A stretch of DNA of 63,553 nucleotides, filler included, from Octopus bimaculoides (GCF_001194135.2; 7 parts of 6 records of this genome joined end to end with filler, not necessarily neighbours in it), one strand, 5' to 3'; counted from the whole stretch's first letter, positions 34,794 to 44,038 are shown. A program made the numbers and translations. The notes: generated by a model not told the origin, from the letters alone.

Positions 34794-34894
34794 TTAAGGT
34801 GCCTTTACCGGAGTTCCCTTTTTTGTAATCATTCCAGCTAGGGCTGATCTCTGGTCTGAGGATAACTTCATTCCACATAACTTCCTCAGGGGCT
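34794..34894 (-). CDS. Putative terminal exon 5 of the EMI-like secreted protein gene (tentative)
   Basis: Acceptor ctcctttattttttAG. Phase 1 gives (E)PLRKLCGMKLSSDQRSALAGMITKKGTPVKAP*. The preceding intron is only 51 nt. Confidence 0.4.
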
Positions 34895-34945
34895 CTAAAA
34901 AATAAAGGAGTTGACTAAACGAATTGACTAAACGAATTCTCTTAC

Positions 34946-35025
34946 CTTCACATCCAATTTCTACGGTTCCATTCCATCCTCGACAGCACCGATAACAAGT
35001 GTCCATTTGGTACTTGTATGCGACT
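34946..35025 (-). CDS. Exon 4 of the EMI-like secreted protein gene
   Basis: Acceptor atttattcaacAG, donor GTAAGA, 80 bp, phase 2 to 1: (R)VAYKYQMDTCYRCCRGWNGTVEIGCE. Confidence 0.85.
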
Positions 35026-35171
35026 CTGTTGAATAAATCACATAAGCAATAAATAGTAGAAACATTCGCTATTACATTGCATATTGGGATGTCGTGCTCT
35101 CTCATTATCTCTCTCTGTCTTTTTCTCTCACTCTCTCTCTCTCTCTCTCTATCGCTCTCTCTCCTTCTACT

Positions 35172-35219
<48 letters not shown>

Positions 35220-36389
35220 CACACACAGACGTGTGTGTGTGCGTGCGTGCGTGCGTGCGTGTATGTGTGTGTGTGTGTGTGAATGAAAATAAAAATAAAA
35301 AATATAAAAAAGGGTTTTGTATGATCGTGTATAGAGGAATATATTATTTAAAAGAGTTCCAGCTCTGTCTGTTTTTTATGTTTTATTTATATTCTTATAA
35401 AATTAATGTGGGACATAGAATATGGAATATATAATATAAATAGTAAAATGAAATGAAGTATTGAATGTCTTATTGAATATATGAAATATTGAGTATTAAA
35501 TATATAAGGACTAGTATACTTTCCTGCCTCNNNNNNNNNNNNNNNNNNNNNNNNNNNNNNNNNNNNNNNNNNNNNNNNNNNNNNNNNNNNNNNNNNNNNN
35601 NNNNNNNNNNNNNNNNNNNNNNNNNNNNNNNNNNNNNNNNNNNNNNNNNNNNNNNNNNNNNNNNTATATATATGTCTGATGAGTCCTCATTACACCTCAA
35701 GACCGGGCGTTTATTGAGCGAAAACACCTAAAGCTCCACGAGGCTCCGGCAGGAGATGGTGGCGAACCCTGCTGTACTCTTTCACCACAACCGGTTTCGA
35801 TGTATCTCATCTTATCAAATATCAGTAAAAAATTATAAAAAGTTGAAGTAAACACAATTCATCTTTTGTCTGGAGGTCAAGACATGCTGAGAAACATCGA
35901 AACTGGTAATATCTTCTTTATATAATTTTTTATTAAATTCCTTCTTAAATTGAAATATCTTAGACTTACTTCTGCGCTATTTCCACCTCCATCTTTTATA
36001 TATAAAAATATGATCTTCATAAATAGAATTTTGGATAATTTTTTATTAGCGCTTTCGTCAGTTCAATCAAACTCTTTCAAGGGTTTGATTACACGAACGA
36101 AAGCACTAATAAAGAATTATCCAAAATTCTGACAGCCTCCTTCTTCTTAATATACATACACACACACACACATACACACATACACACACACACATATATA
36201 TACATATTGTATATACATATAATACAAACATATGTGTATATACATACATACATACATACATACATACATACATACATACATGTATATAAACAATTTACCA
36301 TTAAAATGAAGAATTATTCAGTAACTTTTAGTCGAATACATGCTTGTTAAACTTTTACAAGGAAAAAGTTGACGATGGCTTCGAAACTT

Positions 36390-36890
36390 GAATGTATGAG
36401 ATGGGAGAGGCGATGAAAGATATAAAATATATATGGTGATTGGTAAATGATCGAAATGGGGTGTGAAAATTAAAAAGTGAAATTTATTGTGAGATGTGAT
36501 ATGTGAAATGTAATCTACAAAATGTAGTAGGCTGGAAGTGTGACATATGGAATCTGATAAATAAGATAAGGATGTGATGTTTGAAATGTGAAAAGCAAAA
36601 TGTAAAATGTGAGTTGTGAGATTTAAATTGTGAAATCTGACATATGAGATGTGAGTTGTGCTGTGTAAGTTTCGAGGAGTGAGCTTTGAATTTGTGAACG
36701 GAGAAGTGAGATGCATGAGATATGAACGTGAAAACTGAGCTTTTGAAATGTACAAAGTGAAACATGTGATGAAATGGGTGACGTCTGTGATATGAGATGA
36801 AAGATTTGAGATATAATATGTGTGATGCAAACTGAGAAATTTCAGGGTTAAGATGAAAAATCTGATGTAAAATCTGAAAGATATAAGTAT
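36390..36890 (+). repeat. Degenerate strand-asymmetric tgtgaaa/tgagat low-complexity tract
   Basis: Recurrent tgtga/tgaaat/gagat words and strong C depletion on the + strand. Confidence 0.6.
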
Positions 36891-36919
36891 AGGTTCTTAT
36901 ATAAAACTATTCTACTTAC

Positions 36920-37021
36920 CTGTAACGTTTACATCGTCTCCATCCCCACCAGCCACACTTTACGTGGTAAGACTCCCGCACTGAATATTGTTTCTGACAC
37001 TGGTATGGACATCTTCCGTCA
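36920..37021 (-). CDS. Exon 3 of the EMI-like secreted protein gene
   Basis: Long AG-free stretch before acceptor gtgtacAG, donor GTAAGT, 102 bp, phase 2-2: (S)DGRCPYQCQKQYSVRESYHVKCGWWGWRRCKRY(R). Confidence 0.87.
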
Positions 37022-37390
37022 CTGTACACCAACGTAAATATGCAACCAGATGGACAGGAAACATGTGGGTACAAATATCAAATGTATATAAAAGGTAAGG
37101 AATAAATATATATGAGAAGCAGGTATTAAAATGCATGAAATTGGCTGATAACAAATAAATTATCAGTAAGGAACGCTTAGATACAAAGAAAGTACAAGTG
37201 TGGGACTAGTTAATACAATTAAGTTTTAATTAAGGTATACTGTTGTGTAAACAAAGTTGATAAGATATATTTTTTCACTTATTTGTTTTATTAAATTGTT
37301 TTCTAGAAACATGTGGTAAATATACATGCTTCTCCTATTAATATCTCCTAATTTTTACTCTTAGACAGCAAAGATGGTTTATTAAAGTAC

Positions 37391-37432
37391 CTGAGAGAAC
37401 GCTTCGGGGTATATACCGTATTTTCTTTCAAG
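37391..37432 (-). CDS. Exon 2 (pro-region) of the EMI-like secreted protein gene
   Basis: Acceptor tttgattAG, donor CAG|GTACTT, 42 bp, phase 2-2: (F)LKENTVYTPKRSL(S). Confidence 0.6.
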
Positions 37433-37484
37433 CTAATCAAATTTCTCAGATCAAAAGTTATAGAAAGAAGTAGGTTGACTTATA

Positions 37485-41570: not shown

Positions 41571-41616
41571 GAAAAATTAAAGGTTCAATTAAACACTACT
41601 GTCCTGGATTTCCTGT

Positions 41617-42010
41617 GGAGGCGCAATGGCCCAGTGGCTAGGGCTGCGGACTCGCAGTCATAGGATCGCGGTTTCGATTCCCAGACCGGGCGTTGTGAGT
41701 GTTTATTGAGCGAAAACACCTAAAAGCTCCACGAGGCTCCGGCAGGGGATGGTGGCGAACCCTGCTGTACTCTTTTCACCATAACTTTCTCTCACTCTTT
41801 CTTCCTGTTTCTGTTGTGCCTGTAATTCAAAGGGCCAGCCTTGTCACACTGTGTCACGCTGAATATCCCCGAGAACTACGTTAAGGGTACACGTGTCTGT
41901 GGAGTGCTCTGCCACTTGCACGTTAATTTCACGAGCAGGCCTTTCCGTTGATTAGATCAACTGGAACCCTCGACGTCGTAAGCGACGGAGTGCCAACAAC
42001 AACAACCTGG
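41617..42010 (+). mobile_element. Full-length SINE family A (tRNA-derived head, (CAA)n tail)
   Basis: GGAGGCGCAATGGCCCAGTGG (A-box) ... GGTTTCGATTCC (B-box). Ends cggagtgccaacaacaacaac. Confidence 0.9.
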
Positions 42011-42333
42011 ATTTACACAACAAAGACGACAACGTTAACAAAAGCCGCAACAACAACAGCAAGAACTACTGCTACTACTGCTGCTGGTGCTGCTATTACT
42101 ACTACTACTTCAGCCAAATGTCTCTTATTCAACACAGATCTTTCCCAAACTTATATACCAAGCTGGAGCTAAATTTTAATGGCAGGAATATTATCTGATG
42201 ATCTCTTTTGACTTGAAACAAAACCAGAATTTAAAAGGAAAATAGATATAAAGAAAAGAATTCACGCCAGTCTTTTACTGAAAGACTGTCAACTTTGGCG
42301 GGATAAGAACTTCGATTTTCTGATTCCTTGAAT

Positions 42334-42755
42334 CAGCGGTCTCCGACCTTTTTGCACCAGAGACAGGTCTTGTGTAAAACAATGTTTTCAAGCGATCACA
42401 CGCATGACAAGACACGATAAAGTACATAAAGTGCTTAATTTAATTTAATTATTACAGGTATGGTGATGTAAGCAAGAAAAATAAAACTCAAACTATGAGT
42501 ATACGTATATTTTTATCAATATTTAGCAGAAGCTACTGAGTGACTCAAGGGCCCAGAGTTTCGTACGTTGGCACTTAACAAACCTATCAAAATTTAATTA
42601 TTACTTATATGATCTATATATATACATTACATATACAATACAAAAATACGCTGCAGACTGTGATAGTCAATAAAATAAAGACAAATTTTTAGAATGTATT
42701 CTTTGCGGCCCGGTGGCCAAATAGTCTACAGCTCAGTGCTTACAGACCCGTGCCT
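42334..42755. mobile_element. Degenerate hAT/Charlie-like MITE
   Basis: Starts CAGCGGTCTCCGACCTTTTT, with subterminal gcggcccggtggccaaa near 42705. Right TIR not clearly preserved. Confidence 0.4.
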
Positions 42756-42821
42756 TAAATTACATTTTGTGCAATTCCTAGTATTGTGCTTTATTCTAAT
42801 AAACACAACACATCCCCAATT

Positions 42822-42863
<42 letters not shown>

Positions 42864-43614
42864 TCTCTCCTTCCCTTACACTTGGTTTCTCTACCATTTG
42901 TTTTCATTCTTTCTGGCCACCCGTAATGCTCTAACTAACTCTCTCTCCCTCTCTTACGCTTTCTCTCCTACTCTCTCACTATCTCATTCTCACAAACGCA
43001 CATACACACTCATACACATGCATACACCTACACTCCTTCACTCACGAACTGTTAACATGTTTTTCCTCTCTTTCTTACTTCTGACCACATACCCATCCAA
43101 ATAATGTCTCATTCCGCCCCTCTACTCGTCTGTACACTCTTGCTACCGACGTTGCCATCCATACAACCACTCGTTTGTTAGTTCTGCCTACCCACTTGTA
43201 CTTTTTTGTCTTTTTCTGCCTCTCGCTCTCTCCGTCCGTCTCTGTATATATACATACACACATTTAGTTTTAGAATGGTGGCAGCTGATGAAAGAAATGT
43301 TCTCTATGTGGCCTGTGTGTTTTCTGTACTCTGTTTATCATTTTGTCCACGTTGGTTTTTTTTTTTTTTGCAACGTCCTGTACCCAGATATGCATCTATA
43401 TATACATGTAGATGTAGGTATGTACATACATGTACGTATATATGCATATGATCTCATATTATTTGTATTATTACATACATACATATATATATAAATATTA
43501 TTTCTTTATCGCCCACAAGGGGCTATATATATATATATATATATATATATCTGTATATGTGTATATACATATATAGAGAGAGAGAGGGAGAGAGGGAAAG
43601 AGAGAGAAATGCAA

Positions 43615-43675
<61 letters not shown>

Positions 43676-43877
43676 CAGATAGATAGACAGATAGATGGGT
43701 AGACAGACAAGCAGACCGTCACACCGACACACCGACACACCGACAGACAGATATACCGATCGATCAATAGATACATGCATACAGGCATACATACATTTTC
43801 CTCAGTCTTTAACCCTCCTCATACCATAAGTTCTGTCTTTCTCATTCCCTCTCTTTCTCTCTCTCCTCCATCCCTCC

Positions 43878-43912
<35 letters not shown>

Positions 43913-43967
43913 TCTCTCCCTCTTCCTATAAACAAGAAGACCAGAATGGCAATAAATGTCTACTCAC

Positions 43968-44038
43968 AAAGCCGATACACTAACCAATTGAGAGACAGTC
44001 CACAGTAATAAGAAGACAGTCCGCTTCACGGAGTACAT
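43968..44038 (-). CDS. Exon 1 coding part (signal peptide) of the EMI-like secreted protein gene
   Basis: ATG at 44038. MYSVKRTVFLLLWTVSQLVSVSA plus 2 nt, then consensus donor GTGAGT. Phase 2 matches exon 2. Confidence 0.72.

What the first reader, a model, noticed from the sequence alone, without database searches (positions are those of the whole stretch)
34794..44038. Hidden five-exon gene for a small secreted EMI-like cysteine-rich protein, not assembled by the ORF track
Seen in sequence: exons 44038-43968, 37432-37391, 37021-36920, 35025-34946 and 34894-34794 all have GT-AG boundaries with matching phases (2,2,2,1). They sum to 396 nt and encode MYSVKRTVFLLLWTVSQLVSVSA-FLKENTVYTPKR-SLSDGRCPYQCQKQYSVRESYHVKCGWWGWRRCKRYRVAYKYQMDTCYRCCRGWNGTVEIGCEEPLRKLCGMKLSSDQRSALAGMITKKGTPVKAP*, with no linker inside the span. 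Established: C..W...C..YR..Y......CC.GW....C is the pattern of EMI domains (EMILIN/MEGF10/NIM-Draper types), normally N-terminal to EGF or other repeats. Inference: a signal peptide, a KR-terminated pro-segment and a cationic, Trp/Tyr-rich 8-Cys module with no EGF array would be a stand-alone EMI peptide, possibly an immune, antimicrobial or gland-secreted family.
Basis: partly seen in the sequence, partly recalled or inferred. Interest (0 to 1): 0.85.

Follow-up and report, generated by a model that had tools for sequence, protein, structure and literature searches.

The report
Unannotated gene with short EMI domain

Summary
The five segments are in the sequence exactly as described: GT-AG borders, phases 2,2,2,1, 396 nt, 131 aa. 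Their support is uneven.

- **Exons 3 and 4 (36920-37021, 34946-35025, minus strand) are real.** Their donors rank in the top 0.1-0.5% of all GT sites in the piece. Spliced together they give a peptide significantly similar to EMI proteins that pass Pfam's EMI threshold: crinoid and coral proteins at BLASTP 1e-10 and 2e-8, z 9-12 against shuffles, hhalign 96%.
- **Gene structure matches.** All three intron positions and phases around the domain are the same as in the crinoid genes, and two are shared with vertebrate MEGF11.
- **Pfam's own EMI model does not hit.** The domain is about 58 aa instead of about 70.
- **Exon 1 is plausible.** It is the only canonical signal peptide among the candidate first exons.
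- **Exon 2 is no better than chance** and has no counterpart in the relatives, so the "KR pro-segment" falls.
- **Intron 4 and the tail are weakly supported.** The 51-nt intron is in frame and stop-free, and the 33-aa tail has no homologue.
- **The assembly gap lies inside intron 3** and does not affect the reading frame.

Stand-alone status is unresolved. A 115-aa EMI-only gene in a crinoid is a precedent, but the piece ends 3 kb downstream. This is a new, divergent member of a known domain family, of modest interest.

The parts
43968..44038 (-). Putative exon 1: ATG (A at -3) plus a 23-residue signal peptide, MYSVKRTVFLLLWTVSQLVSVSA. It ends in phase 2 with donor TTT|gtgagtag.
   Evidence: It is the only candidate first exon with a charged n-region, a hydrophobic core and a V-S-A end. 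Phase 2 matches the signal exons of the crinoid relatives. No transcript evidence.
37391..37432 (-). It is a 42-nt frame-neutral cassette with a weak acceptor and the donor CAG|gtactt.
   Evidence: it is one of 253 open frame-preserving cassettes, and 9 of them, counting this one, have signals at least as good; the relatives have no exon here. Its GC of 43% against 28% in intron 2 is the only hint in its favour.
36920..37021 (-). Exon 3: N-terminal half of the EMI domain, (S/F)DGRCPYQCQKQYSVRESYHVKCGWWGWRRCKRY(R). It enters in phase 2 three codons before Cys1 and leaves at TAC AG|gtaagt, phase 2.
   Evidence: donor at the 99.9th percentile; same intron positions and phases as the crinoid genes and MEGF11.
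35531..35664 (.). Assembly gap (134 N) inside intron 3, next to a (TA)n run and a SINE-like fragment.
   Evidence: Exons 3 and 4 on its two sides complete one domain in phase, so the order and orientation of the join are right. The intron length (1894 nt as written) is only an estimate.
34946..35025 (-). Exon 4: C-terminal half of the EMI domain, (R)VAYKYQMDTCYRCCRGWNGTVEIGCE. It leaves at TGT GAA G|gtaaga, phase 1, one residue after the last Cys.
   Evidence: donor at the 99.5th percentile; phase-1 exit conserved.
34895..34945 (-). Putative 51-nt mini-intron 4: in frame, no stop, 29% GC, strong T-rich acceptor. If retained it adds GKRIRLVNSFSQLLYFL.
34794..34894 (-). Putative terminal coding exon: tail EPLRKLCGMKLSSDQRSALAGMITKKGTPVKAP plus TAA. 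It has no homologue.
   Evidence: no hit reaches the tail positions of the profile; open run not significant; the first poly(A)-like hexamers lie 675 and 767 nt downstream inside repeats; GC 45.5%.
37800..38400 (-). Decayed MULE-type transposase fragment inside intron 1. It is not part of the gene product.
   Evidence: PF10551 E=0.0016, below the cut-off; frame broken by stops.

Best explanation
The minus strand carries a real protein-coding locus that is missing from the public protein collections searched here.

**Structure (shown).** Two adjacent exons, 37021-36920 and 35025-34946, encode a shortened EMI domain of about 58 aa from first to last Cys. It belongs to the subclass marked by CG[WLV][WF]GW[GR]RC..YR.

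**Structure (inferred).** As the sequence stands, the reading frame then closes after a 33-residue tail, whether the 51-nt intron 4 is removed or retained. The product would be a secreted, basic protein of about 11 kDa made of the EMI module alone: a 117-aa precursor, or 131 aa with exon 2.

**How it would work (inferred from what EMI domains do elsewhere).** EMI domains are disulfide-locked extracellular protein-binding and multimerisation modules. A free EMI module would bind the partners of larger EMI proteins or matrix components, acting as a soluble adaptor or competitor. It may have arisen by partial duplication of the 5' end of a larger EMI-EGF gene, as the crinoid example suggests. The ninth, unpaired cysteine could allow covalent dimers.
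For: - **Sequence and splice facts:**
- **EMI homology:** BLASTP 1e-10 to P0124 (Anneissia japonica LOC117100828) and 2e-8 to P0111 (coral). Smith-Waterman z = 11.7, 10.5 and 9.0, with 0 of 5000 composition-preserving shuffles reaching the score. hhalign of a 15-sequence EMI profile that excludes the window sequence gives Prob 96.1%, E 3.4e-9. The three relatives pass Pfam EMI with 32, 40 and 41.7 bits against a cut-off of 25.
- **Gene structure:**
  - Signal|EMI junction: phase 2, three codons before Cys1, in the window and in both crinoid genes.
  - Mid-domain intron: TAC AG|gt, phase 2, in all three, and CAC CG|gt in vertebrate MEGF11.
  - Exit: phase 1, one or two residues after the last Cys.
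  - EMILIN1's EMI domain is likewise carried by exons 2 and 3 (PMC3342094).
- **Closing as a small protein:** strong acceptor 51 nt after the donor; GC 45/29/45.5% across exon 4, intron 4 and exon 5; no Cys-rich EGF-like exon in 31757-34794.
- **Precedent:** both annotated isoforms of the Anneissia gene are 115 aa (signal + EMI + 13-aa tail), with no EGF exon inside the gene. The mature proteins have a similar size and pI.
Against: - Pfam's EMI model gives no hit at E<=10. An HMM built only from vertebrate MEGF10/11 EMI domains scores 2.6 bits, a score reached by 2.8% of shuffles.
- There is no transcript evidence, and no protein in 5.8 billion clusters contains these exons.
- The tail has no homologue among 1.84 billion representatives. 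Its open frame is not significant (P about 0.11).
- A 51-nt intron is far shorter than the gene's other introns (0.37-6.9 kb).
- The phase-1 donor after exon 4 is the one that leads to EGF exons in relatives.
- EMI domains are described as N-terminal parts of larger proteins (PMC3342094, PMC11949838).
- The piece ends only 3 kb downstream.
- The first poly(A)-like hexamer lies 675 nt after the stop, inside a repeat.
Confidence: 0.45

Rival explanations
1. The exons are the 5' end (signal peptide plus EMI domain) of a larger secreted or membrane protein of the EGFL7/8-like, MEGF-like or hemicentin-like kind. Its EGF or other exons would lie beyond the end of this 15.8-kb piece. The reader's exon 5 would then be intron sequence that happens to be open.
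For: - The donor after exon 4 is very strong and sits at the conserved phase-1 exit. In Antedon 'EGFL8' (P0095) that exit leads to an EGF exon, and in MEGF11 to the EGF array.
- P0111 and P0095, two of the three closest relatives, carry EGF domains after the EMI domain.
- The large gene next to the Anneissia EMI-only gene starts with the same kind of EMI domain.
- The literature describes EMI domains as N-terminal to larger proteins (PMC3342094, PMC11949838).
- The tail has no homologue and its open frame is not significant.
- Intron 1 here is 6.9 kb if exon 2 is dropped, so a next exon more than 3 kb away would be ordinary.
Against: - No EGF-like exon lies in the remaining 3 kb.
- A very good acceptor sits 51 nt downstream, and the GC profile across it looks like exon/intron/exon.
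- An annotated EMI-only relative exists.
Confidence: 0.4
2. The EMI exons are a non-functional relic: a partial duplicate or decaying copy of the 5' end of an EMI gene that is no longer expressed as a protein.
For: - The domain has lost about 9 residues in each of two loops compared with its relatives, and no longer reaches the Pfam model.
- No annotated or assembled protein contains it.
- The locus is full of SINE-like, MULE and microsatellite insertions.
- The cysteine count is odd.
Against: - Both exons are open.
- Every invariant column of the EMI alignment (4 single Cys, the CC pair, the G) is kept.
- All splice sites around exons 3 and 4 are intact and near consensus.
- An intact signal-peptide exon in the right phase is present.
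Confidence: 0.12
3. The whole gene model is a chance assembly of open segments and GT-AG dinucleotides in AT-rich repeat-laden DNA.
For: This holds for exon 2 and cannot be excluded for exon 5.
Against: For exons 3 and 4 it is excluded. The evidence is z of 9-12 against shuffles, hhalign 96%, three conserved intron positions and phases, and donors in the top 0.5%.
Confidence: 0.02

Closest known systems
Anneissia japonica LOC117100828 (XP_033096544.1 and XP_033096543.1, 115 aa; uncharacterised RefSeq prediction)
   Same: - Signal peptide + EMI domain + short tail, and nothing else.
- Shares the CGWWGW[GR]RC..YR motif.
- BLASTP 1e-10.
- Identical positions and phases of the signal|EMI and mid-EMI introns, and a phase-1 exit.
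- The mature protein is about 11 kDa with pI about 9.5.
   Different: - Its EMI domain has the normal length (68 Pfam positions, 32 bits), while the window's is about 18 residues shorter and misses Pfam.
- Its tail is a 13-aa exon 5.4 kb downstream, not a 33-aa exon 51 nt downstream.
- It has 7 cysteines against 9.
- It comes from a deuterostome, so orthology is unlikely to be traceable.
Invertebrate 'EGFL8-like' EMI-EGF proteins (Antedon mediterranea XP_071953225.1, 260 aa; coral Desmophyllum KAJ7369386.1)
   Same: Same EMI subclass (CG[VL][FW]GWGRC..YR ... CC.GW) and same intron positions.
   Different: They continue into one EGF and two calcium-binding EGF domains. No such exon is seen in the 3 kb available here.
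MEGF10/MEGF11/PEAR1 (Draper/CED-1 type engulfment receptors)
   Same: An N-terminal EMI domain split by a phase-2 intron at the homologous Arg codon, with a phase-1 exit one residue after the last Cys. Shared YSV..ESY and CC.G motifs.
   Different: Sequence similarity to this subclass is not significant on its own (2.6 bits; z 4.6). These are proteins of about 1100 aa with an EGF array and a transmembrane segment.
EMILIN/multimerin family (EMILIN1)
   Same: Shares the string RYRVAYK and the following ..RCC.G[YW].G motif with an EMILIN1-like fragment (P0022, 19 bits). In EMILIN1 the EMI domain is encoded by exons 2 and 3 after a signal exon (PMC3342094).
   Different: EMILINs have about 80-aa EMI domains with 7 Cys and the strict WRCCPG(Y/F)xGxxC motif, followed by coiled coils and gC1q. 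None of that is present here.

Membership tests
EMI domain (Pfam PF07546) | Scores above the Pfam EMI gathering threshold (25 bits) | tested here: not met
   No hit at E<=10 for the full model or for three domain-only constructs.
EMI domain (Pfam PF07546) | Significant similarity to proteins that do pass the Pfam EMI threshold (transitive homology) | tested here: met
   P0124, P0111 and P0095 score 32, 40 and 41.7 bits on PF07546. The window peptide against them: BLASTP 1e-10 and 2e-8; z 11.7, 10.5 and 9.0 with 0 of 5000 shuffles; hhalign against a 15-sequence EMI profile gives Prob 96.1%, E 3.4e-9.
EMI domain (Pfam PF07546) | Cysteine framework and the C-terminal signature WRCCPG(Y/F)xGxxC (PMC3342094) | tested here: met
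   All invariant columns of the real-EMI alignment A7 (C, C, CC, G, C) are present. The signature is relaxed to YRCCRGWNGTVEIGC, much as in P0124 (YYCCNGWLEDAYGRC). There are two extra Cys in the core.
EMI domain (Pfam PF07546) | Length of about 70-80 residues | tested here: not met
   56 residues from the first to the last Cys. About 9 residues are missing between Cys1 and the CGWW motif, and about 9 between RYR and CC.
EMI domain (Pfam PF07546) | Single copy at the N-terminus, directly after the signal peptide | tested here: met
   This holds under the exon 1 to exon 3 model. The junction is in the same phase and position as in the crinoid genes. Exon 1 itself has no transcript support.
EMI domain (Pfam PF07546) | Domain carried by two exons with a conserved mid-domain intron and a phase-1 exit | tested here: met
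   TAC AG|gt, phase 2, in the window, Anneissia and Antedon; CAC CG|gt, phase 2, in MEGF11. The exit is phase 1, one or two residues after the last Cys. EMILIN1 uses exons 2 and 3 (PMC3342094).
EMI domain (Pfam PF07546) | Three-disulfide beta-rich fold | not testable with these tools
   The structure predictor and the exhaustive search accept only sequences that are contiguous in the window. The literature reports no experimental EMI structure (PMC11990869).
EGFL7/8-like (EMI + EGF + cbEGF) | EGF and calcium-binding EGF domains after the EMI domain | tested here: inconclusive
   No Cys-rich EGF-like open segment on the minus strand in 31757-34794. The piece ends there, so exons further on cannot be seen.
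MEGF10/11/Draper/CED-1 receptors | EMI domain of the MEGF10/11 sequence type, followed by an EGF array and a transmembrane segment | tested here: not met
   An HMM of ten MEGF10/11 EMI domains scores 2.6 bits, reached by 2.8% of shuffles. No EGF or transmembrane exons lie in the available sequence.
Stand-alone EMI-only secreted proteins (as annotated for Anneissia LOC117100828) | The transcript ends after the EMI domain with a short tail and no further domain | not testable with these tools
   No transcript data. In the genome the frame closes 33 codons after exon 4, but the tail has no homologue and its openness is not significant.
   Only the net charge was computed. The pI of 9.5 equals that of the crinoid EMI-only relative, so it is not diagnostic.

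The most novel reading that the evidence does not exclude
Mini-EMI proteins: a lineage-specific class of about 11-kDa secreted proteins made only of a shortened, basic EMI module. They would arise by partial duplication of the signal and EMI exons of large EMI-EGF genes, independently in this animal and in crinoids. They would act as soluble competitors or adaptors for the binding partners of EMI-bearing matrix proteins or engulfment receptors.
Probability: 0.35. Interest if true: 0.45.

Novelty: new member of a known kind. Interest (0 to 1): 0.3.

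Why it matters
EMI domains are described as single N-terminal modules of large matrix proteins and engulfment receptors (EMILINs, multimerins, EGFL7, MEGF10/Draper/CED-1).

A confirmed free-standing, shortened EMI protein would show the minimal sequence that still folds as EMI, which is useful because no experimental EMI structure exists. 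It would also suggest a way for animals to regulate EMI-mediated interactions with a soluble module.

In practice the finding also shows that a short, multi-exon, repeat-surrounded gene on a small gapped scaffold is absent from the public protein collections searched here. If the gene simply continues off the scaffold, it is an ordinary EMI-EGF gene with a divergent N-terminal domain.

Tried and rejected
- **Pfam scans** of the full model and of three domain-only constructs: nothing at E<=10.
- **PDB sequence search:** only chance hits to ribosomal protein eL37, E 0.7-1.
- **Word-indexed search of 5.8 billion proteins** with the spliced protein: no hit.
  - With an alignment seeded by EMILIN1 and MEGF10 EMI domains it returned only vertebrate fragments.
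  - With the coral and crinoid relatives it returned two proteins.
- **Exhaustive search and structure prediction:** I built a side-by-side profile from window-exact pieces and one bridging protein.
  - Two attempts misaligned (A3, A4).
  - A5 worked, but the bridging MEGF10 sequence dominated it.
- **HMM of ten vertebrate MEGF10/11 EMI domains:** not significant. I rejected it as a test because its members are nearly identical.
- **Exact look-ups** of two gene models (131 aa and 117 aa) and eight window ORFs: none is in the collection, so the source organism could not be identified.
- **Metagenome scan** for related loci: nothing.
- **Rfam and tRNA scans** of the piece: nothing.
- **Paralogous EMI or EGF exons** in the piece: none.
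- **O-fucosylation sites** equivalent to MMRN1 T216 and T265 (PMC11949838): by eye, no Thr or Ser at the corresponding spacing. I left this as untested.

Full report
**1. What is in the sequence**

The usable piece is 31757-47572. It has 38% GC and assembly gaps at 33096-33105, 34405-34414, 35531-35664, 44458-44967 and 45739-45915.

The borders are AG/GT, the lengths are 71, 42, 102, 80 and 101 nt, and the phases are 2,2,2,1. The sum is 396 nt, and the translation is identical to the quoted 131-aa protein ending in TAA. A plain ORF list shows only fragments of it: 36916-37074, and 34794-35222, which reads through intron 4.

**2. How much of it is more than chance**

I scored all 978 GT sites on this strand with a generic metazoan donor matrix (frequencies from my own knowledge).

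| Exon | Donor | Percentile |
|---|---|---|
| 3 | CAG\|gtaagtag | 99.9 |
| 4 | AAG\|gtaagaga | 99.5 |
| 1 | TTT\|gtgagtag | 91 |
| 2 | CAG\|gtacttta | 95 |

- **GC content:** exons 3, 4 and 5 have 48, 45 and 45.5% GC. Introns 2, 3 and 4 have 28, 32-33 and 29%.
- **Exon 2** is 42 nt, so skipping it keeps the frame. The intron between exon 1 and exon 3 holds 253 open, frame-preserving AG..GT cassettes. Nine of them, counting exon 2 itself, have splice signals at least as good. Exon 2 is therefore not above chance.
- **Exon 1** is one of 117 ATG..GT phase-2 candidates.
  - Only 7 combine a hydrophobic stretch with a non-negative donor score.
  - The other six have neither a charged start nor a small-residue cleavage motif, and three of them lie in the low-complexity tract just below exon 1.
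  - Exon 1 has a basic n-region (K5, R6), a 13-residue hydrophobic core and V-S-A at -3 to -1, with A at -3 of the ATG.
- **Intron 4** is 51 nt, in frame and stop-free. Removing or retaining it gives the same C-terminus.
- **The open tail:** a 50-codon open run after the exon 4 donor occurs at 11% of positions on this strand, so openness alone says little.

**3. The assembly gap**

The gap at 35531-35664 lies in intron 3, beside a (TA)n run and a SINE-like fragment. Exon 3 and exon 4 are the two halves of one domain. They are on the same strand, in the right order and in matching phase, so the scaffold join is correct. No coding frame crosses the gap. Only the intron length is uncertain. The relatives have no extra exon at this point, so a hidden exon in the gap is unlikely.

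**4. What the core is**

Direct tests failed.
- Pfam gives no family at E<=10, for the whole model or for the domain alone.
- The word-indexed search of 5.8 billion proteins finds nothing.
- An HMM of ten vertebrate MEGF10/11 EMI domains scores 2.6 bits, which 2.8% of shuffles reach.

The exhaustive search refuses spliced sequences. I therefore built a profile from window-exact pieces set side by side with one bridging MEGF10 fragment (A5). It returned 103 proteins. Most are vertebrate MEGF10/11/PEAR1 fragments.

Re-scoring all fetched proteins with the window peptide singled out a coral protein (P0111) and a crinoid 'EGFL8' (P0095). A follow-up search added the crinoid protein P0124. All three share CG[WLV][WF]GW[GR]RC..YR and CC.GW with the window's CGWWGWRRCKRYR...CCRGW, and all three pass Pfam EMI.

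| Relative | Pfam EMI bits (cut-off 25) | BLASTP E | Smith-Waterman z |
|---|---|---|---|
| P0124 | 32 | 1e-10 | 11.7 |
| P0111 | 40 | 2e-8 | 10.5 |
| P0095 | 41.7 | not run | 9.0 |

None of 5000 composition-preserving shuffles reached the observed scores. A profile of 15 real EMI domains that does not contain the window sequence aligns to it with hhalign probability 96.1% and E 3.4e-9.

The window domain keeps every invariant column. It lacks about 9 residues between Cys1 and the CGWW motif, and about 9 between RYR and CC. That explains the Pfam miss.

**5. Gene structure as independent evidence**

I mapped the crinoid proteins on their genomic loci.

| Junction | Window | Anneissia | Antedon | Vertebrate MEGF11 |
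|---|---|---|---|---|
| Signal exon end / next exon start | TT\|gt / T GAC GGA AGA TGT | CG\|gt / T CGA AAT GTC TGC | CG\|gt / T CCT CAT GTG TGT | not comparable |
| Mid-EMI intron (phase 2) | TAC AG\|gtaagt | TAC AG\|gtaggc | TAC AG\|gtaaac | CAC CG\|gtgagt |
| Exit after EMI (phase 1) | TGT GAA G\|gtaaga | TGT ACA ATT C\|gtgagt | TGT TCA ATT C\|gtaagt | TGT ATA C\|gtatgt |

- In both crinoid genes exon 1 encodes only the signal peptide and ends in phase 2. The next exon starts three codons before Cys1. The window's exon 3 starts at the same place in the same phase.
- The mid-domain intron splits the Arg codon five residues after the fourth Cys in all three genes, and falls at the homologous Arg in MEGF11.
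- The exit is phase 1 in all of them.
- EMILIN1's EMI domain is also carried by exons 2 and 3 (PMC3342094).

Three shared intron positions and phases, added to the sequence statistics, leave no reasonable doubt that exons 3 and 4 are genuine EMI exons.

**6. Stand-alone or not**

In favour of a small protein:
- The acceptor 51 nt after the donor is the best in the model (82% pyrimidines).
- The GC profile across it reads exon/intron/exon.
- No EGF-like Cys-rich segment lies on this strand in the remaining 3 kb.
- There is an annotated precedent. Both isoforms of Anneissia LOC117100828 are 115 aa (signal, EMI, 13-aa tail), and no EGF exon lies inside that gene.
  - That gene sits between two hemicentin-like genes, and the downstream one begins with a paralogous EMI domain. 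This suggests origin by partial duplication.

Against it:
- The tail matches nothing among 1.84 billion representatives.
- A 51-nt intron is very short next to this gene's other introns.
- The conserved phase-1 exit is the one that leads to EGF exons in P0095 and in MEGF11.
- The first poly(A)-like hexamers are 675 and 767 nt beyond the stop, inside repeats.
- The piece ends at 31757.
- No protein in the public collections contains these exons, and there is no transcript evidence.

I put the stand-alone reading at about 0.45, the larger-gene reading at about 0.40 and a relic at about 0.12.

**7. How it would work**

- **Shown:** the product has a divergent EMI core.
- **Inferred from the model:** it starts with a signal peptide. 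The mature protein is 94 aa (108 aa with exon 2), pI about 9.5, with 9 Cys, 4 Trp and 7 Tyr (8 Tyr with exon 2).
- **From the literature:** EMI domains are disulfide-bonded extracellular modules that self-interact, bind gC1q domains and proTGF-beta, and sit at the N-terminus of their proteins (PMC3342094). They need to fold to be O-fucosylated and secreted well (PMC11949838, PMC11990869).
- **Inference:** a free EMI module would act as a soluble binder or competitor for such partners. The odd cysteine could give dimers.

The basic charge is shared with the crinoid relative.

**8. Comparison with what is known, and novelty**

The domain is a member of the EMI family by homology and gene structure, although it fails the Pfam threshold and is shorter than any relative seen here. 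It is closest to an invertebrate subclass that NCBI names 'EGFL8-like', not to the EMILIN or MEGF10 types.

That makes it a new, divergent member of a known kind. If it is confirmed as EMI-only, it would be a modest new variant, for which a database precedent exists but which I did not find described in the papers read here.

The source organism was not identified.

Noticed in passing
window 32744-33043 = 33106-33405; 34141-34404 = 34415-34678; 44163-44247 = 44373-44457: Blocks that are 100% identical lie on both sides of the 10-N gaps at 33096 and 34405, and just before the 510-N gap at 44458. They look like unmerged contig overlaps (assembly artefacts), not real tandem duplications.
   Followed up: partly
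window 37800-38400 (minus strand), inside intron 1: A decayed MULE-type transposase fragment (PF10551 E=0.0016, below the cut-off), with its frame broken by stops.
   Followed up: partly
window 33858-34539, 40276-40930, 46233-46424 (about 192-nt family); 35730-35782 and 41723-41775: Several copies of SINE-like repeats in both orientations. One family starts about 100 nt after the model's stop codon and carries the first poly(A)-like hexamers. ARAGORN and Rfam recognise nothing in them.
   Followed up: partly
window 36318-36846 (intron 3): A minisatellite of about 14-nt units (TGTGAGATGTGA-like) produces a spurious 170-aa open frame on the minus strand.
   Followed up: no
window 35100-35290: Long (CT)n and (CA)n microsatellites begin about 75 nt upstream of the exon 4 acceptor. 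They are why the mechanical ORF 34794-35222 starts with MCVCVC...
   Followed up: no
L005 (Anneissia japonica VUNX01011003.1) 10001-17835 and 24481 onward: The 115-aa EMI-only crinoid gene lies between two hemicentin-like genes of about 2500 aa each. The downstream one begins with a signal peptide and a paralogous EMI exon (59% identical to Antedon EGFL8's over 41 aa). This suggests the small gene arose by duplication of a 5' end.
   Followed up: partly
P0004, P0005, P0009, P0026 and many hits (Logan and NCBI fragments): Many short database 'proteins' annotated as EMI or MEGF10/11 are intron read-throughs that stop at the conserved EMI introns. They are convenient for locating intron positions, but they are not real short EMI proteins.
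   Followed up: yes
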